A stretch of DNA of 63,812 bases, filler included, from Octopus bimaculoides (GCF_001194135.2; 5 parts of 5 records of this genome joined end to end with filler, not necessarily neighbours in it), one strand, 5' to 3'; shown: positions 8,700 to 22,918, counted from the first letter of the whole stretch. Numbers and translations are program-made. Notes: a model not told the origin generated them from the letters alone.

Positions 8700-8898
8700 T
8701 CTTTTACTCTTTTACTTGTTTCAGTCATTTGACTGCGGCCATGCTGGAGCACCGCCTTTAGTCGAACAAATCGACCCCAGAACTTATTCTTTGTAAGCCT
8801 AATACTTATTCCATCGGTCTGTTTTGCCGAACCGCTAGATTACGGGGGCGTAAACACACCAGCATCGGTTGTCAAGCGATGATGGGGGTACAAACACA

Positions 8899-8944
<46 letters not shown>

Positions 8945-9157
8945 NNNNNNNNNNNNNNNNNNNNNNNNNNNNNNNNNNNNNNNNATATACATATATACGA
9001 TGGGCTTCTTTCAGTTTCCGACTACCAAATCCACTCACAAGGCTTTGGTCGGGTCGAGGCTATAGTAGAAGACACTGCCCAAAGTGCCACGCAGTGGGAC
9101 TGAACCCTGAACCATGTGGTTGGTAAGCAAGCTACTTACCACACACCCATTCCTGCA
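8700..9157 (-). mobile_element. SINE family A, near full length, with internal (CA)n and a gap
   Basis: Tail 8700-8900 and head 8990-9157 match the family consensus seen elsewhere in the window. Confidence 0.9.
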
Positions 9158-10381: not shown

Positions 10382-10514
10382 TTAAGAATCCTTCCTACTG
10401 TAGGTACAATGCCTGGAATTAGTGGGGAGGAGAATGGTCGATCACATCGACCCCAGTACTTGATTGGTACTTATTTTATCAATCCGGAAAGGATGGGAAT
10501 TTGAACTCAGAACG

Positions 10515-10810
10515 TGAAGACGGACGAAATACCTATTTCTTTACTGCCCACAAGGGGCTACACACAGAGGGGACAAACAAGGACAGACAAACGGATTAAG
10601 TCGATTATATCGACCCCAGTGCGTAACTGGTACTTAATTTATCGACCCCGAAAGGATGAAAGGCAAAGTCGACCTCGGCGGAATTTGAACTCAGAACGCG
10701 GTGGCAGACGAAATACCGCTAAGCATTTCGCCCGGCGTGCTAACGTTTCTGCCAAGCGTTTCGCCCGGCGTGCTAACGTTTCTGCCAAGCGTTTCGCCCG
10801 GCGTGCCAAC
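10515..10810 (-). mobile_element. SINE family B with a triplicated 33-bp 5' head
   Basis: Body GAGTTCAAATTCCGCCGAGGTCGAC...GGGGTCGATAAATTAAGTACCAG; three tandem AAGCGTTTCGCCCGGCGTGCTAACGTTTCTGCC units at 10721-10810. Confidence 0.9.
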
Positions 10811-13106: not shown

Positions 13107-13169
<63 letters not shown>

Positions 13170-13178
<9 letters not shown>

Positions 13179-13415
13179 GTGTGTGTGTTTGTATGTCTTT
13201 GTGTTTGTGTCCACCGCCACCACAGCTCGAGAACTACTGTTGGTCTGTTTACATCCCCGTAACCTAGCGGTTTGGCTAAGGACACCGAACACCGATAAAA
13301 TAAGTACTAGGGTTAAAAAGAAGGTTCTCGGATTGATTCAATCAACTGAAATTCTTCAAGGTGGTGCCCCAGCATGGACGCAGTCTAATGACTGAAACAA
13401 GTAAAAGATAAAAAA
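13170..13415 (+). mobile_element. SINE family A, 3' half
   Basis: CCCGTAACCTAGCGG...AAATAAGTACTAGG...CCAGCATGGACGCAG. Confidence 0.75.
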
Positions 13416-13894
13416 ATAATGACTTCAAAATTTGGTAGAATGCGTACAAATTTAGGAGGGGGCCTAATGTGATTATATCGATTCTAGAACTTGACTGGTA
13501 CCTTATTTTATCGATTTTAAAGGGTGAAAGGCAAAAGTTGATCCTGGCGACATTTGAACTGTCGCTTAGCTGTTTGTCTGACACGCTAACAACTCTGCCA
13601 GCTTCGCCATTGTCATTACAAAATCTACGTTAGACGAAAGGCTGACAGATGTAAGGGAAATAATACTGACTGATTTGTAACGAAAATCAAAAGAGGGAAA
13701 AAAGAAGTGAGTAATCTCCCTTGAAAATTGCATTTGTTCAAATGAAACGCTGAAGATGTATTCAACATAATATATACAGGCAGGGGATTTGCAGAATCGT
13801 TAAAGAGCTTGACAAAATGCTTGTGCTATTTAGCTAAATTTTTTTACGTTCCTTTCCATGGTCAGTCTAAGTTATGCATGGCATTATAATATAA

Positions 13895-14590: not shown

Positions 14591-14984
14591 AGGTTTTGAC
14601 CGAAGAGGAAAGTGTGATTTCAGTCCTTTCATTAACGTCCAGCATAGAACCGTTTTAGCTAGAGTAAATATACGAAACTGCTTGCCGTTCCCAGAACAGA
14701 AACGCGGCGGAACGGTCTTCACGATAAACTCAGCCCCATTAACGGATCCATCCGGTAGTTATTCAGTCGACCCCGAAAAGATGAAATGTAACGTCGATTT
14801 TGGCGGAACTGGAATCCAGGAGACAAAGAGCTGGAAGAAATGTCACAAAGCACTTTGTCCGTCGCGCTAACTATTCGCCAGTGATTAATACGAGGTGGGG
14901 GGAATATTTATAATAACAATGAATAAAAGGCAATGACTTGGAATGTTGTTTGCGAAAAGGTAACCTGAAACCGGGTGCTGGGGT

Positions 14985-15303
14985 AGGATCATAGCCATGT
15001 GTTGAGAAGAATTCTATGAGGTTTAAATGTTTCAACACTGAAAACATGGATGTTTTGTTCCTCATCCTTAAAGAACCCTTATTCAGGGACCTTTTGTGCG
15101 GGATGGGCTACCGGACCTGAAGAAAATTCTAACTGGGCCCCACCTGTAATGTCATACGCTGTTTATCTTGATATAAGATTACCATTTCATGCACATATGG
15201 TTGTAATGCAAGTATTTGGTGTACTCTTGTCTGACAGGTAGTCATGATGGGTATATTTTGCACCCCAGTGTTACATTAACGGCATGCATTGCTCACTTTC
15301 TCA
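14985..15303 (+). mobile_element. Non-autonomous repeat, family E, ending in (AAT)n
   Basis: CATCATAGCCATGTGTTGAG...CCCTTATTCAGGGACCTTTTG...GGTAGTCATGATGGGTAT; matches 16545-16960 and 20770-21380. Confidence 0.8.
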
Positions 15304-15363
<60 letters not shown>

Positions 15364-15366
<3 letters not shown>

Positions 15367-15616
15367 CCCGTGCTAAAATTGCTGCCTTAGATATTATGAC
15401 TGAAAAATGGCATGGAAAACCTCTCAATGGCAAATACCCAAAGAGAGTGAATAATGCAGATATTGACAAAGCCCTTACCCATCAATGGCTAATGGCCTCT
15501 GGCTTGAAATCAGAAACAGAGGGGTTTATCATAGCAGCCCAAGATCAATGCCTACCTACAAAGAACTACCAGGCCAACATATTAAAGAATGGCAGCTCCC
15601 CATTATGTCGTATATG
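15364..15616 (+). mobile_element. R4/Dong-clade non-LTR retrotransposon fragment (region before the zinc knuckle)
   Basis: KWHGKPLNGKY...THQWLMASGLKSETEGFIIAAQDQCLPTKNYQANILKNGSSPLCRI; the ETEG.IIAAQDQ.L.T.NY...CR motif is characteristic of RLE LINEs of the R4 clade. Confidence 0.88.
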
Positions 15617-16409
15617 NNNNNNNNNNNNNNNNNNNNNNNNNNNNNNNNNNNNNNNNNNNNNNNNNNNNNNNNNNNNNNNNNNNNNNNNNNNNNNNNNNNN
15701 NNNNNNNNNNNNNNNNNNNNNNNNNNNNNNNNNNNNNNNNNNNNNNNNNNNNNNNNNNNNNNNNNNNNNNNNNNNNNNNNNNNNNNNNNNNNNNNNNNNN
15801 NNNNNNNNNNNNNNNNNNNNNNNNNNNNNNNNNNNNNNNNNNNNNNNNNNNNNNNNNNNNNNNNNNNNNNNNNNNNNNNNNNNNNNNNNNNNNNNNNNNN
15901 NNNNNNNNNNNNNNNNNNNNNNNNNNNNNNNNNNNNNNNNNNNNNNNNNNNNNNNNNNNNNNNNNNNNNNNNNNNNNNNNNNNNNNNNNNNNNNNNNNNN
16001 NNNNNNNNNNNNNNNNNNNNNNNNNNNNNNNNNNNNNNNNNNNNNNNNNNNNNNNNNNNNNNNNNNNNNNNNNNNNNNNNNNNNNNNNNNNNNNNNNNNN
16101 NNNNNNNNNNNNNNNNNNNNNNNNNNNNNNNNNNNNNNNNNNNNNNNNNNNNNNNNNNNNNNNNNNNNNNNNNNNNNNNNNNNNNNNNNNNNNNNNNNNN
16201 NNNNNNNNNNNNNNNNNNNNNNNNNNNNNNNNNNNNNNNNNNNNNNNNNNNNNNNNNNNNNNNNNNNNNNNNNNNNNNNNNNNNNNNNNNNNNNNNNNNN
16301 NNNNNNNNNNNNNNNNNNNNNNNNNNNNNNNNNNNNNNNNNNNNNNNNNNNNNNNNNNNNNNNNNNNNNNNNNNNNNNNNNNNNNNNNNNNNNNNNNNNN
16401 NNNNNNNNN

Positions 16410-16504
<95 letters not shown>

Positions 16505-16544
16505 TAATAATAATAATGATGATGATGATAATAAAATCTCTGAT

Positions 16545-16960
16545 ACAATACCAGGCAGTGGCTCTCATGGCTTCTGATTTTAATTAATTGGAAGTATTAT
16601 CATGTACATTGTTTTATCTTAGTATAAAAGATGGGCAACAACAAATATTCTGTTCAATACCACAGATTTACTTGTCAGTTGCTTGACCTTAACCTGTGGA
16701 GCATGTCCCTTAGTAGCTGACGATATGTGCATCCCCGGTCACGCGCAGAAGTAGTGGGGCAGCATCATAGCCATGTGTTGAGAGGAATTCTTTGGAGTTT
16801 GAATATTTCACCTCTGGAAACATGGGTGTTTTGTTCAACATCCTTAAACAACCCTTATTCAGGGACCTTTTGAGCGGGATGGGCTACTCAGCCTGATGAA
16901 AATTGTAACTGGGCCCCACCTGCAAGGTCATGCGCTGTTTATCTTGATATGAGGGCATCA
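16545..16960 (+). mobile_element. Family E non-autonomous repeat (5' part), preceded by (AAT)n
   Basis: Nearly identical to 20830-21240. Confidence 0.85.
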
Positions 16961-18325
16961 ATGTTGTGATTGAGGAATTAAAACAGAGTTTGAAAGCTAA
17001 AATACTTAAACTAAAGAGATATGAAGAGATTTGAGCAGTACGGATTAAACAGATTTTTCGAACAAAATCAGAAACGAGTCTATGAGGAAACGGATGGCAA
17101 AGAAAAAGGTGAAAAGGCTGTGCCGGATGCTGAAGAAAGCAAAATATTCTGGTCAAACATAAGGTCACAAGAGAAACAACACAAAACTGAAGCAGAGTGG
17201 GCTGTTGTTGTAGTGTACCCATCCTGAAATGGATGCAAGCGGAAATCGATCGCACTATGCGAAAGACAATGGCAATGCATGGTGTCCTCCACCCTAAGGC
17301 AAATGTACACTGGCTCTACATGAAGAGAGGTAAAGGTGGACGTGGGCTGATTGGCGCACAGGAGTTCATCAACATTGAAAGAAAAAACATAGCAGAATAT
17401 TTGGTAAACAGCAAACAAGACCTGCTACAGTATGCTGCTAATGCAGAAGGATTTACCAAAAATGGACTTGAGAGTGCTCATGAATTCCGATCAAGAACAG
17501 CTAACGAGAGAGAAGAAATCCTACTCCGCATGGAATTACATGGTCAGTTCCACTGTGAAACCAAGAAATTAAAAGACCAGGAAGCATCATGGAGGTGTTT
17601 CAACGAGGGTGACCTAATCATCGCTGCCCAGGACCATGCATTGAGTACCAACTCAGTCAAAAAGAATGTATACCACACAAGCGCAACGAACTTCCACAGA
17701 ATGTGTGGGAAGAGGGATGAAAGTGAACTCATTGTTGGTGCTTGTGAAAGTCTTGCACAGAAAGAGTACAAGCTTATACACAACAACGTAGCCCAAGATC
17801 TCCACTGGCCGTAAGTATGGATATAAGATTACGGGTGCTTTGTACCAACATACACCGGAAAATGTAATGGACGAAATGGGGATTTCCAGACAAACAAGGT
17901 GTTAGAGCACCGAAGGCCGAATATAGTAACCCTTAGGATGGACTAACAAGAGTGTCTAACAATCGACGTAGCAGTGCCAGGTGATCAACATGTTGTCATG
18001 AAAGAAAGAGAAAAATTTGATATATATGGAGACCTGAGAATTGGGGTCGCTAATATGTGGCAGCTACGAGAGTCGAACATAAAGGTTATCTCTACTGTCA
18101 TCGGAGTATTGGGTTCAATACCACCCAATCTGGAAAAAAAAAGCATTTGAAAACCTTAGAAATATCCTACAATCTAGATGTATTGCAAAAGTCGGCATTA
18201 CTTGAAACTGCACGCATATTGCTTAAAGTACTGTCTGTCTGAGATCCTTGTTATGACTTGACAAACAGTTAAATCCCCCGATGGACACAATATCTTCAAT
18301 CAACAACCTAACGATATTGTATATT
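16960..18325 (+). mobile_element. R4/Dong-clade LINE, internally deleted (pre-RT region fused to thumb, CCHC and RLE)
   Basis: NRFFEQNQKRVY...SKIFWSNI..EAEW joined to AVVVVYP..LYMKRGKGGRGLIG...LIIAAQDHALSTN..RMCGK..ELIVGACESLAQKEY..HNNVAQDLHW...RPNIV..CLTIDVAVPGD...LQKSALLETARILLKVLSV*; 3' UTR then (AAT)n. Confidence 0.88.
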
Positions 18326-18330
18326 GTGCG

Positions 18331-18382
<52 letters not shown>

Positions 18383-18424
18383 TAATAATAATAATGATAA
18401 TAATAATAATAATCATAATAATAA

Positions 18425-18954
18425 ACTAGATATTGTTGTGAAAGGCAAAAGCAATAAAGTCTGTTTACTGATTGACATGAGTATACCCTGTGATCATAAT
18501 ATCTCGGCAAAAGAATTTGATAAGCTCAGAAAATATAAGGATTCACTAATCGAAATCGAAAAGATGTGGCATCTCAAGATGGTTACAATACCAGTGATTG
18601 TAGGAATGGCCAAATAAAGGAACTAAAATATATTTAAGAATGATCTCTGGCTTACCATCAATGCAAGAAGTGCAAAAGATTGTCTTAACTGCTAAGTCAC
18701 ACGTATTGAGGAGACCACTGTCGGTGTGAATTTTCTTTCTTTCTCCCCCCTTATTTGTTTACTTTCCTGTTCTGTATTTTTTCCTTTTTCCCTCTGTCTT
18801 CCCCATTTCCTCCATCACATGATTCTGTAAATGAACAATCTGGTATGCTTGTTTTAATGACCTGCCAATGCATACAGTACGTTTCTCTGCCCTAGGTGTC
18901 AGGAAAACACTCGGCAAGAAATGGAAACAAAACTTGAGAGAAAATGCAAATGAA

Positions 18955-19006: not shown

Positions 19007-19109
19007 TTAATCCTTTGTAGTAAAGGCAAAACGCCTACNNNNNNNNNNTCGGTGGAATTTGAACTCAGAACGTAAGGACGGACGAAACGCCGTTAAGCAT
19101 TTTTCCCAG

Positions 19110-19430
19110 CATACAAAGAATGACCATTGGCTTACCATCAATGCAGAAAGTGCAAGAGATTCTCTTAACTGGCACATCACTCCTACTGAGAGGAGCATTG
19201 TCGCTGTGTATTTTCCTTCCCTTTTCCCCTTTATTTTTTGTTTACTTTTTTATTTTTATTGTTCCTTTTTCTCTGTCTTTCTTCCTCTTTTTCTCTATCA
19301 CATTACTTTGTAAATGAACAATCTGGTGTGTTTATGTTAATGGCCTACCAATGTACACAGTGCGTTTCTCTGTCCAAGATGTCAAGAAGACGCAGCAAAA
19401 AATGGAAACAAAATTGAAAGATGATAATAA
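19110..19430 (+). mobile_element. Second copy of the same R4/Dong 3' end
   Basis: GGCTTACCATCAATGCAG...AATGAACAATCTGGT is similar to 18650-18850; ends in an (AAT/AAC)n tract. Confidence 0.8.
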
Positions 19431-19464: not shown

Positions 19465-20200
19465 ATTTATAATAATGGGTGAGAAACTCAGGACTCAAAG
19501 CAGAGACTGGAGAATTTTTCATTGCAGCACCGTGAAGCCTTCCCACCAGAAATTAATAAAAGCATGTAATGAAAAGAAATACAAGTGACTCCAGAATATG
19601 CGGAGATGGAGAAGAAACAATAAATCCAATTATCTCTGGCTGCCCAGTCTTGACTAAGAAGGAATATATTCACAGACAGAGTTGGGACCTACATACACTG
19701 GAAGCTATGCCAACACTTTGGGATAACAACAGAAAAAAGATGGTATAAGCATACGCCAGAAAAGGTCACAAAAAATGAGAAAGCAACCATACTCTGGAAT
19801 ATGTCAATACACACATATAAATTAAGGTCAATAGGCCGGATATAGTTGTCAGAAATCTCCAAGAAAAAATGCTTTCTAATCGATGTATCAATACCAACAG
19901 ATGCCAATGTTTCTCTAAAAAAAAAGAAAACGGAAAAACTTTCAAAATATAAACATCTCGAAACAGAGGTAACTCGAATGTGGAGTCTAAAATCAGAAAT
20001 AATTCCTGTCATAGTAGATGCATTAGATATGGTAACAAAATATTGACACAAATGCATCACAAAAACACCAGGACTAACAAGTTTGTCTCTTTGGGACAGC
20101 AAGGATTATGAGGAAGGTTCTAAGCACTTGAGAAATTGTTGAAAACTTGTGGATACCTAAGGTTACCCACATAATTCTTACCAGGAATAAGAACGAACCT
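19465..20200 (+). mobile_element. R4/Dong-clade LINE fragment (CCHC zinc knuckle plus RLE)
   Basis: RICGDGEETINPIISGCPVLTKKEYIHR...HWKLCQHFG...ILWNM...RPDIVV..KCFLIDVSIPTDANVS..KLSKYKHLETEVTRMW (frameshifted). Confidence 0.88.
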
Positions 20201-20765: not shown

Positions 20766-20769
20766 GATT

Positions 20770-21378
20770 TGAAAGCGTTATCATGTACATTGTTTGTCTT
20801 GGTATAAAAGATGGGCTACAGCAAATGCCCGGATGCAGTACCAGGCAGTGGCTCCCATGGCTTCTTATCTTAATTGATTGGAAGTATTATCATGTACATT
20901 GTTTGTCTTGGTATAAAAGATGGGCTACAGCAAATATTCTGCTTAATACCACAGGTTTGCTTGTCAGTTGCTTGACCTTAACCTGTGGAGCGTGTCCCTT
21001 AGTGGCTGACGATATGTGCATCCCCGGTCACGCGCAGAAGTAGTGGGGAAGCATCATAGTCATATGTTGAGAGAAATTATTTGGGGTTTGAGTAATTCAC
21101 CTCTGGAAACATGGGTGTTTTGTTCAACATCCTTAAACAACCCTTATTCAGGGACCTTTTGAACGGGATGGGCTACTCCGCTTGACGAAATTTGTAACTG
21201 AGCCCCACCTGCAAGGTCATGCGCTGTTTATCCTGATATGGGTCACCATGTCGTACACCTATGGTTGTGATGCATGTACCTGGTGTACCCTTATCAGACA
21301 GGTAGTCATGATGGGTATTCTGGGCTTCATATATTTTACCCCAGTGTCACTTTGATGGCATGCACTGCTCTCTCACTC

Positions 21379-21380
<2 letters not shown>
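20770..21380 (+). mobile_element. Family E non-autonomous repeat (most complete copy), ending in (AAT)n
   Basis: Spans both the 16545 and 14985 copies; the 5' segment TATCATGTACATTGTTTGTCTTGGTATAAAAGATGGGCTACAGCAAAT is duplicated at about 20779 and 20887. Confidence 0.85.
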
Positions 21381-21430
<50 letters not shown>

Positions 21431-21610
21431 GCAGCAGTGGTAATAGTGGTGGTGGCGGTGGTTATGTTATTGGTGTTGCTGCTGCTGATGATGATGAGGA
21501 TGTTGATTATAATGAGGTTGATGACGATGTTAGTGATGATGATAATGATTATGATGATACTGACGATGATGATGATGGATAAAATCTCTCAATATAAAAG
21601 ATATATTTAC

Positions 21611-22918
21611 CTTCCAAGGGCAGAGTTCGGTATTGATGAGTCAAAGGTAATTTATCAACCAATAATACTGTCTTTATCTCGTGTTGTTCTATGGGTAGTG
21701 TAAATTGGATATTGCGTTGTCCGCCATCTTGGGTACTGGGTGGTGTACCAAGGTCTGTATCGTGTTGTCCGCCATCTTGGATACTGGGTGGTGTACCAAG
21801 GTCTGTATTGTGTTGTCCACCATCTGGGGTACTGGGTGGTGTACCAAGGTCTGTATTGTGTTGTCCGCCATCTTGGATAATGGGTGGTGTACCAAGGTCT
21901 GTATTGTGTTGTCCGCCATCTTGGGTACTGGGTGGTGTACCAAGGTCTGTATTGTGTTGTCCACCATCTTGGGTACTGGGTGGTGTACCAAGGTCTGTAT
22001 TNNNNNNNNNNNNNNNNNNNNNNNNNNNNNNNNNNNNNNNNNNNNNNNNNNNNNNNNNNNNNNNNNNNNNNNNNNNNNNNNNNNNNNNNNNNNNNNNNNN
22101 NNNNNNNNNNNNNNNNNNNNNNNNNNNGTCCGCCATCTTGGGTACTGGGTGGTGTACCAAGGTCTGTATTGTGTTGTCCACCATCTTGGGTACTGAGTGG
22201 TGTACCAAGGTCTGTATTGTGTTGTCCACCATCTTGGGTACTGAGTGGTGTACCAAGGTCTGTATTGTGTTGTCCACCATCTTGGGTACTGGGTGGTGTA
22301 CCAAGGTCTGTATTGTGTTGTCCACCGTCTGGGGTACTGGGTGGTGTACCATGGATTGTAGCAAGGTGTTGTCCACCAACTCGGGTACTGGGTAGTGTAC
22401 CACGGCCTGTATCTATCTGTCGTCCATCTTGGATAGCTGGTAGTATACCACGGCCTGTATTTATTTGTCCTCCATCTTGGGTAGCTGGTAGTATACCACG
22501 GCCTGTATCTATCTGTCCTCCATCTTGGATAGCTGGTAGTATACCACGGCCTGTATTTATTTGTCCTCCATCTCGGGTAACTAGTAGTGTACCACGGCCA
22601 GTAGTTTGTTGTACCCCATCTTGGGTAGTTAGTAGTGTACCACGGGTTGCATAGATTTGTCCACCATTGAGGCTTATTTGTGGTGTACCACGGCCAGTTG
22701 GGTGTTGTACCCCATCTTGGGTAGTTGGTAGTGTACCAAGGCCAGTAATTAGTTGTACCCCATCTTGGGTAATTAGTGGTGTACCTCGGCCAGTAATTAG
22801 TTGTACCCCATCTTGGGTAATTAGTGGTGTACCTCGGCCAGTAATTAGTTGTACCCCATCTTGGGTAGTTGGTGGTGTACCTCGGCCAGTAATTAGGCGT
22901 ACCCCAGTTTGGTGCAGG
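21611..22918 (-). CDS. Probable large internal exon of an unidentified gene: about 25 copies of a 16-aa repeat (GTPPSTQDGGQHNTDL / GILPATQDGGQINTGR / GTPLITQDGVQLITGR) plus a short unique tail
   Basis: One - strand frame has no stop on either side of the internal N gap (22002-22127). There are no indels between diverged units. The Gly after QD uses all four GGN codons. The unique tail NIQFTLPIEQHEIKTVLLVDKLPLTHQYRTLPLE ends at GAAG|GTAAAT (phase 1). The 5' end is lost at the assembly spacer. Confidence 0.6.
21705..22918. repeat. 48-bp tandem array with three sequence zones
   Basis: Unit GTATTGTGTTGTCCGCCATCTTGGGTACTGGGTGGTGTACCAAGGTCT and variants; the 48-bp period is constant. Confidence 0.95.

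What the first reader, a model, noticed from the sequence alone, without database searches (positions are those of the whole stretch)
21611..22918. Cryptic 16-aa-repeat protein exon inside an apparent minisatellite
Seen: the - strand frame LHQTGVRLITGR(GTPPTTQDGVQLITGR)...(GILPATQDGGQINTGR)...(GTPPSTQDGGQHNTDL)n-NIQFTLPIEQHEIKTVLLVDKLPLTHQYRTLPLE has no stop on either side of the internal gap. Even the most diverged units (GTPQISLNGGQIYATR, GTLPSTRVGGQHLATIH) keep the 48-bp register. Differences include synonymous ones (GGT/GGC/GGA/GGG, CGT/CGA, CAA/CAG). It ends at GAAG|GTAAAT, followed by intron-like microsatellite. The ORF track misses it as one ORF because the start lies in the spacer and the nominal gap length breaks frame. 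Inference: an exon of an uncharacterised, possibly cephalopod-specific protein, either an O-glycosylated Thr/Pro-rich spacer or a Gly/Thr beta-solenoid-like repeat. I do not recognise the family.
Basis: partly seen in the sequence, partly recalled or inferred. Interest (0 to 1): 0.7.

Follow-up and report, generated by a model that had tools for sequence, protein, structure and literature searches.

The report
Coding-like 48-bp minisatellite, different reading frame

Summary
A 48-bp tandem array (21 full units, one of them 51 bp) fills 21700-22918 on the - strand. An N gap interrupts it and the piece's edge cuts it off.

- Only 2% of point changes could make a stop in it.
- Two of the three - frames are open.
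- Its pN/pS is 0.99.
- Variation peaks at its second codon position, giving P<->L and T<->I swaps.

The other open - frame reads YTTxYPRW-xTTxYxPW and looks coding:
- It has no stops although 11% of point changes would make one (P=0.003).
- Synonymous changes are in excess: 32 of 74 parsimony events against 17 expected (P=0.0002). A conservative count gives only P=0.08.
- Y1, T2, T3 and P6 are invariant yet use 2-4 codons each.
- The two half-units match at 5 of 8 residues with only 14 of 24 bases.

No homologue, Pfam family or related locus was found. Expression is untested. Across the gap, frame continuity needs a length of 5 mod 48; the nominal 126 breaks it.

My best reading, at about 0.55, is the 3' coding end of an orphan repeat protein.

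The parts
22128..22918 (-). Array segment above the gap. It holds a degenerate leading part-unit (PAPNWGTPNYWPR), then 15 full units (one of 51 bp) and a 31-nt partial unit. The inferred coding frame has its codons starting at 22918. The piece's edge cuts it off at the 5' end.
   Evidence: TRF; six-frame translation; unit tables; codon table.
22002..22127 (.). Assembly gap inside the homogeneous part of the array. The true length must be 5 mod 48 to keep the register, or at least 2 mod 3 to keep any frame. The nominal 126 satisfies neither.
   Evidence: The flanking units are identical in type.
21700..22001 (-). Array segment below the gap: a 12-14 nt lead plus 6 units (94% alike). The last unit degenerates at the array boundary (YTTQYPRWRTTQYPIY).
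   Evidence: TRF.
21658..21699 (-). Short non-repeat C-terminal tail in the inferred frame: TTHRTTRDKDSIIG.
   Evidence: Translation.
21652..21657 (-). Double stop, TGA TAA, ending the inferred frame.
   Evidence: Translating 21655-21999 (-) gives 114 aa plus a stop.
21605..21614 (-). It is present, but it lies downstream of the stop of the constrained frame. I do not count it as part of the coding sequence.
   Evidence: Sequence.

Best explanation
The - strand of about 21655-22918 is most likely the 3'-terminal coding part of a gene for an orphan tandem-repeat protein. It is read in the frame TAC ACC ACC CAG TAC CCA AGA TGG | TGG ACA ACA CAA TAC AGA CCT TGG.

This encodes at least 21 copies, plus those in the gap and beyond the piece's edge, of a 16-residue unit. 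The unit is built of two related octapeptides, YTTxYPRW and xTTxYxPW. A short tail follows (TTHRTTRDKDSIIG), then TGA TAA.

Shown here: the array varies with period 3 and is constrained at the amino-acid level in this frame and in no other.

Inferred from composition only: the product is a disordered, low-complexity extracellular or structural domain. The consensus unit is about 25% Thr, 19% Tyr, 19% Trp, 12.5% Pro, 12.5% Arg and 12.5% Gln. The Thr-Thr pairs are candidate O-glycosylation sites. The Tyr/Trp and Arg residues could act as cation-pi or pi-pi 'stickers', as in adhesive or coacervating repeat proteins.

The array grows and homogenises by unequal exchange in 48-bp steps, which always preserve the frame.
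For: 1. Stops. The frame has no stop in 21 units, although 11.1% of point changes to the consensus would create one. The expected number is 4.2 among 48 variant alleles, P=0.003.

2. Synonymous excess. On a UPGMA/Fitch reconstruction, 32 of 74 events are synonymous against a null mean of 17.0, P=0.0002. No other frame combines synonymous excess with openness.

4. A tree-free permutation of columns shows that variation concentrates in one codon phase: P=0.03 by entropy and 0.019 by pairwise difference.

5. Codon table:
- Y1 is 21/21 (TAC 18, TAT 3).
- T2 is 21/21 (ACC 14, ACT 7).
- T3 is 21/21 (ACC, ACT, ACA).
- P6 is 21/21 (CCA, CCT, CCG, CCC).
- T10 is 21/21.
- P15 is 19/21 (CCG 9, CCT 10).
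- W8 is 20/21.
- The third bases of the non-degenerate TGG codons W8 and W16 never vary (column entropies).

6. Five of the six C>T variant alleles fall on third positions.

7. The two half-units are 5/8 identical as peptides with only 14/24 identical bases.

8. The period (48) and the one indel (3 bp) are both multiples of 3.

9. G+C of the array is 0.48-0.50, against 0.29-0.37 in most of the flanks.
Against: - There is no external support. Neither frame has a relative in the 5.8-billion-protein search.
- The 57 phmmer hits in the 1.84-billion-protein representative library are unrelated periodic or low-complexity proteins at 15-45% identity.
- No Pfam family passes its cut-off. DUF7736 scores 16.9 and 19 bits against a cut-off of 25.
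- Nothing was found among PDB sequences, in the metagenome or genome contigs, or in papers.
- The most conservative count, with each column allele counted once, gives a synonymous excess of only P=0.08.
- The nine youngest units have too few variants to show constraint (3 synonymous of 7, P=0.19). Present-day function is therefore not shown.
- A protein with 19% Trp is compositionally extreme.
- No AATAAA or ATTAAA lies within 2.39 kb downstream of the stop.
- The 5' part of the gene (start, signal peptide, acceptor) is beyond the piece's edge.
- The gap may hide a stop or a frameshift.
- AF2 gives no structure (pLDDT 35.8). That fits disorder but proves nothing.
Confidence: 0.55

Rival explanations
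1. This is an ordinary non-coding minisatellite in repeat-rich intergenic or intronic DNA. The open frames follow from a stop-free 48-bp unit being copied. The period-3 pattern is chance, or the fading imprint of a sequence that once coded (a dead relic).
For: - The surroundings are microsatellites, a dispersed repeat of about 660 bp with an (AAT)n tail (20769-21430), and retroelement-like ORF fragments.
- No other exon is evident.
- Several frames are open.
- The tree-free tests are only moderately significant: P=0.02-0.03, and synonymous excess P=0.08.
- The young units show no significant constraint.
- There are no homologues anywhere.
- No poly(A) signal lies near the stop.
- The implied Trp content is extreme.
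Against: - The absence of stops in a stop-prone frame (P=0.003), the synonymous excess (P=0.0002), the invariant residues carried by 2-4 codons each and the peptide-level similarity of the half-units all point to the same frame.
- The period and the one indel are both multiples of 3.
- The array is not part of the neighbouring dispersed repeat, whose other two copies lack it.
Confidence: 0.33
2. An internal exon is read as (GTPPSTQDGGQHNTDL)n, with the unique tail NIQFTLPIEQHEIKTVLLVDKLPLTHQYRTLPLE, and is spliced out at GAAG|GTAAAT (21611). It encodes a Thr/Pro spacer or a Gly/Thr beta-solenoid.
For: - The frame is open on both sides of the gap.
- Residue 9 is Gly in 21/21 units with all four codons, and Q11 uses CAA and CAG.
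- A reasonable donor-like site follows the open stretch.
- The single-sequence AF2 model is beta-rich with pLDDT 55.9 and pTM 0.43.
- The non-significant Foldseek hits are mostly beta-helix proteins.
Against: - pN/pS is 0.99.
- Synonymous events are depleted: 16 against 23.5 expected, P(>=obs)=0.986.
- Variation is maximal at codon position 2.
- Pro/Leu alternate at residues 3 and 4, and Thr/Ile at residues 2 and 6. These swaps are hard to reconcile with a solenoid or any constrained peptide.
- Openness is uninformative: stop-proneness is 2.1% and P=0.33.
- The half-units are 2/8 alike as peptides.
- The best Foldseek match has E=1.0 and TM at most 0.33.
- There are no homologues.
Confidence: 0.07
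3. The array is coding on the + strand, in the frame PPSWVLGGVPRSVLCC.
For: The frame has only one stop in 21 units.
Against: - pN/pS is 0.95, with no synonymous excess: 21 against 22.9 expected.
- The + frame that does show third-position excess carries 18 stops.
Confidence: 0.02

Closest known systems
Coding minisatellites / exonic VNTRs of mucin-type and other tandem-repeat proteins
   Same: - The DNA unit is a multiple of 3 (48 bp).
- It forms a long array within one exon-like stretch, with the units at one end homogenised.
- The peptide is rich in Thr and Pro, with paired Thr residues.
- The array collapses into an assembly gap.
   Different: - Thr+Pro+Ser is only about 38-40% of the unit, and Trp, Tyr and Arg make up half of it. 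That is not a typical PTS domain.
- No signal peptide, flanking mucin domains or glycosylation evidence can be seen.
- There is no sequence homology to any annotated protein.
Short-peptide-repeat adhesive or structural proteins of molluscs, such as the mussel foot protein 1 decapeptide repeats. This comparison comes from my own knowledge and was not tested.
   Same: Many tandem copies of an 8-10 residue motif that combines Tyr, Pro, Thr and a basic residue. The composition suits cation-pi and aromatic interactions.
   Different: - Arg replaces Lys, and Trp is abundant.
- No homology was found.
- Tissue, secretion and modification (DOPA, Hyp) are unknown.
- The organism itself is unidentified.
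Known cephalopod structural repeat proteins (reflectins, suckerins, beak His-rich proteins)
   Same: They are lineage-restricted, repetitive, aromatic-rich proteins encoded by repetitive exons.
   Different: - No Pfam family, and so none of these, reaches its cut-off in either frame.
- The motif and composition differ: no Met/Asp reflectin motifs and no Gly/His/Ala modules. That comparison is from my own knowledge.
- The cephalopod origin is not verified.
Non-coding minisatellite
   Same: A head-to-tail array with a 48-bp unit and an internal 24-bp sub-period (TRF), in microsatellite- and transposon-rich DNA.
   Different: It shows period-3 variation, synonymous excess and stop avoidance in one frame.

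Membership tests
Protein-coding tandem repeat (exonic minisatellite) | Unit length and indels are multiples of 3 | tested here: met
   The period is 48 bp. The only length variant is one 51-bp unit.
Protein-coding tandem repeat (exonic minisatellite) | One frame stays open beyond chance, with an excess of synonymous variation | tested here: met
   In the alternative - frame there are 0 stops against 4.2 expected (P=0.003). Synonymous events number 32 against 17.0 expected (P=0.0002), but the conservative count gives only P=0.08. pN/pS is 0.41.
Protein-coding tandem repeat (exonic minisatellite) | The array is transcribed and translated | not testable with these tools
   No transcriptome or proteome of the source organism is available. 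Exact-product look-ups found nothing.
Protein-coding tandem repeat (exonic minisatellite) | The frame is continuous over the whole array | tested here: inconclusive
   The gap at 22002-22127 must be 5 mod 48. The nominal 126 is not, and the true length is unknown.
   pN/pS is 0.99. Synonymous events are 16 against 23.5 expected. Variation peaks at codon position 2.
Beta-solenoid repeat protein | A confident solenoid model, or a significant structural match | tested here: not met
The best Foldseek PDB match has E=1.0 and TM at most 0.33. The alternative frame gives pLDDT 35.8 and no secondary structure.
Mucin-type PTS domain | Repeats dominated by Pro/Thr/Ser and O-glycosylated, in a secreted protein | tested here: inconclusive
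   The alternative-frame consensus unit has 4 Thr and 2 Pro in 16 residues, with Ser in some units. Aromatic residues plus Arg make up 8 of the 16. Glycosylation and a signal peptide are not testable, because the N-terminus lies off the piece.
Any curated protein family (Pfam-A), including DUF7736 | Score at or above the family's gathering cut-off | tested here: not met
The only matches are to DUF7736 (PF24875), at 16.9 and 19 bits against a cut-off of 25, in the alternative frame.
Internal minisatellite of the neighbouring dispersed repeat or transposon | The array is present in other copies of the element | tested here: not met
   The copies at 16533-16953 and 14979-15364 lack it. The unit's 24-mer occurs only inside the array.

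The most novel reading that the evidence does not exclude
The array is the repeat domain of a lineage-restricted structural or adhesive protein of a previously undescribed type. It would be an octapeptide-pair repeat with about 19% Trp, 19% Tyr, 25% Thr and 12.5% Arg, and no detectable relative among billions of predicted proteins. It would work through aromatic/arginine sticker interactions, perhaps coacervation, and Thr glycosylation.
Probability: 0.15. Interest if true: 0.6.

Novelty: new member of a known kind. Interest (0 to 1): 0.35.

Why it matters
If it is expressed, this would be an unannotated orphan gene for an unusually Trp/Tyr/Arg-rich repeat protein. Short-read assemblies and ORF finders miss such sequences, and this one sits in a gap-broken minisatellite. 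It is a candidate for the repetitive structural, adhesive or mucus proteins that interest biomaterials research.

There is also a methodological point. In a tandem array whose period is a multiple of 3, an open frame is nearly worthless as evidence. The phase of the variation identifies the frame, and here it overturns the frame chosen by eye.

Tried and rejected
Rejected on pN/pS 0.99, synonymous depletion and position-2 variation.
- **+ strand frames.** Rejected.
- **Protein homology.** Both frames were searched against 5.8 billion proteins with no result. The alternative frame was run with phmmer against 1.84 billion representatives and gave only spurious periodic or low-complexity hits.
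- **Control search.** A retroelement-like ORF from the same piece found only a 32% match in coelacanth. The word-indexed database therefore seems to hold little from this organism, and its silence is weak evidence.
- **Family and structure libraries.** Pfam, PDB sequences and Rfam gave nothing, and ARAGORN found no tRNA.
- **Related loci.** The protein-pattern scan of the metagenome contigs found none. The DNA 21-mer scan gave one chance match in a bacterial-looking contig that has no array. The genome contigs gave none.
- **Exact-product look-ups.** None found.
- **Literature.** The peptide strings and DUF7736 were not found. A keyword search returned nothing specific.
- **AF2 and Foldseek.** Low confidence and no significant match.
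- **Constraint among only the youngest units.** Too few variants to say.
- **Donor site before the alternative-frame stop.** By inspection of the sequence, only weak candidates exist (ACA|GTATTA, TTG|GTTGAT).
- **Organism.** It could not be identified.

Full report
**1. What is there**

Tandem Repeats Finder reports a 48-bp array at 21710-22001 (6.1 copies, 94% matches) and at 22128-22896 (16 copies, 84% matches). A 24-bp sub-period shows at 22745-22867. On the - strand I cut the array into 21 full units: 15 above the gap and 6 below it. One of them (B10) is 51 bp.

The array runs into the edge of the piece at 22918, so its 5' side on the - strand is not visible. A 24-mer from the unit occurs only inside the array.

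**2. The gap**

The sequence above the gap stops 31 nt into a unit. The sequence below it resumes with the last 12 nt of a unit. The nominal 126 is 30 mod 48 and 0 mod 3, where 2 mod 3 is needed, so it breaks every frame.

Both flanks are the same unit subtype. The partial unit equals the first 31 nt of A1, and A0 equals B12. The gap is thus a collapse within the homogeneous part of one array. Continuity is plausible but unproven.

**3.

No. In an array whose period is a multiple of 3, any frame that is stop-free in one unit is stop-free throughout.

- Two of the three - frames are open over both segments. One + frame has a single stop.
- Zero stops among the 48 observed variant alleles therefore has P=0.33.

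**4. Which frame, if any, is constrained?**

Variation among units is phased. Column entropy sums are 5.05/12.28/7.74. A permutation of columns that uses no tree gives P=0.03 (entropy) and P=0.019 (pairwise difference) for such a concentration in any phase.

That position is the third position of the other open - frame:

TAC ACC ACC CAG TAC CCA AGA TGG TGG ACA ACA CAA TAC AGA CCT TGG = YTTQYPRW WTTQYRPW.

Results for the two frames:

|---|---|---|---|
| pN/pS | 0.41 | 0.99 | 7 |
| Synonymous events of 74 (null mean) | 32 (17.0), P=0.0002 | 16 (23.5), depleted | 12 |
| Share of point changes that make a stop | 11.1% | 2.1% | 11 |
| Stops among 48 variant alleles (expected) | 0 (4.2), P=0.003 | 0 (1.0), P=0.33 | 15 |
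| Conservative synonymous count (expected) | 14 (9.8), P=0.08 | 15 (13.0), P=0.28 | 15 |
| Mean pairwise amino-acid identity (nucleotide identity 0.777) | 0.734 | 0.605 | 15 |
| Half-unit peptide identity (14/24 bases identical) | 5/8 | 2/8 | 25 |

The per-position codon table for the alternative frame is the clearest evidence:

- Y1 is 21/21 (TAC 18, TAT 3).
- T2 is 21/21 (ACC 14, ACT 7).
- T3 is 21/21 (ACC, ACT, ACA).
- P6 is 21/21 (CCA, CCT, CCG, CCC).
- T10 is 21/21.
- P15 is 19/21 (CCG 9, CCT 10).
- W8 is 20/21.
- The third bases of the single-codon Trp residues W8 and W16 do not vary.

Five of the six C>T variant alleles lie on alternative-frame third positions.

**5. Caveats on the statistics**

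- The parsimony count treats a recombining array as a tree, which may inflate recurrent events.
- The conservative count gives a synonymous excess of only P=0.08.
- Among the nine youngest units there are only 7 variants (3 synonymous, P=0.19). Recent constraint is therefore not shown.
In the alternative frame this is simply a variable residue (G/W/R/T).

**6. Consequences for the anatomy**

The constrained frame continues past the last unit as ...YPRWRTTQYPIYTTHRTTRDKDSIIG. It ends at TGA (21657-21655) followed by TAA (21654-21652).

They are not part of the inferred coding sequence. Only weak donor candidates precede the stop, by inspection of the sequence. The simplest model is a terminal coding exon.

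Against that model, there is no canonical AATAAA or ATTAAA on the - strand for 2.39 kb downstream. That stretch holds an (ATC/ATG)n microsatellite at 21486-21577 and a dispersed repeat of about 660 bp with an (AAT)n tail at 20769-21430. Two other copies of that repeat in the piece lack the array. G+C is 0.48-0.50 in the array and 0.29-0.37 in most of the flanks.

**7. External evidence: none**

- Neither frame has a relative at E<=0.01 in the 5.8-billion-protein search.
- An exhaustive phmmer of the alternative frame against 1.84 billion representatives gave 57 hits (best 1.3e-16). At 15-45% identity these are unrelated periodic or low-complexity proteins.
- A control search with a retroelement-like ORF of the same piece found only a 32% coelacanth match. 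The indexed database seems to hold little from this organism, so its silence is weak evidence.
- Pfam gave only a sub-threshold DUF7736 match (16.9 and 19 bits against a cut-off of 25).
- PDB sequences, Rfam, metagenome and genome contigs, exact-product look-ups and papers gave nothing.
- AF2 from a single sequence gave pLDDT 35.8 and no secondary structure for the alternative frame. That model has no significant Foldseek match; the best has E=1.0. Such low-confidence beta models are common for repeat sequences, in my experience.
- The cephalopod attribution could not be tested.

**8. Best explanation and function**

With confidence of about 0.55, the array is the 3' coding end of an orphan gene for a repetitive protein, (YTTxYPRW-xTTxYxPW)n. 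It expands and contracts in frame-preserving 48-bp steps.

Function is inferred from composition only. I expect a disordered extracellular or structural domain. Its Thr pairs may be O-glycosylated. Its Tyr/Trp and Arg residues could drive adhesive or phase-separating interactions.

Rivals:

| Rival explanation | Confidence |
|---|---|
| Neutral minisatellite, or dead relic of a former coding sequence | 0.33 |
| + strand coding | 0.02 |

**9. Novelty and verdict**

Coding minisatellites and orphan repeat proteins are a known kind of thing. This would be a new member with an unusual composition. Interest is moderate to low (0.35) until expression is shown.

Noticed in passing
window 20769-21430 (+); copies at 16533-16953 and 14979-15364: A dispersed repeat of about 660 bp ends in an (AAT)n/(TAA)n tail. 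It has three copies in the piece, 81-92% alike, and looks SINE-like or like a non-autonomous retroposon. One copy sits about 230 bp downstream of the array's stop codon on the - strand. Rfam and ARAGORN found no match, so no tRNA origin is shown.
   Followed up: partly
window 15216-15620 (+), 17197-17814 (+), 18324-18617 (+), 19846-20046 (+): These are ORF fragments. From my own knowledge, their motifs (IIAAQDQ/H......DxSIPxDxN...KYKxLxxExxxMW...IPVIVG) resemble the C-terminal parts of ORF2 in non-LTR retrotransposons. Pfam gave no hit. The only database match is a 32% identical uncharacterised coelacanth protein.
   Followed up: partly
window 10437-10810, 13498-13563, 14754-14819, 19049-19117: A second family of short dispersed repeats (families D10, D15 and D16). 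One copy carries a 33-bp tandem repeat at 10721-10810 (2.7 copies, 96%).
   Followed up: no
window 8702-8944 versus 13158-13414: Inverted copies of another repeat adjoin (CA)n/(TG)n microsatellites. They are 76-89% complementary and about 4.2-4.6 kb apart (I1 and I4).
   Followed up: no
window about 8945-8990, 15620-16375 and about 19050: Further N runs (assembly gaps) lie inside the piece. They show up as X stretches in the ORF list. The large one sits between a retroelement fragment and an (AAT)n microsatellite.
   Followed up: no
window 22128-22918 versus 21700-22001: The array has three unit subtypes in blocks: YTTNYPRWGTTNYWPR/W (B0-B5), YTTSYPRWRTNKYRPW (B6-B9) and YTTQYPRWWTTQYRPW (B10-A5). 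Homogeneity rises towards the 3' end. This suggests recent expansion at that end.
   Followed up: partly
The + strand reads as a poly-Asp/Asn pseudo-ORF (21274-21582). It is not evidence of a gene.
   Followed up: no
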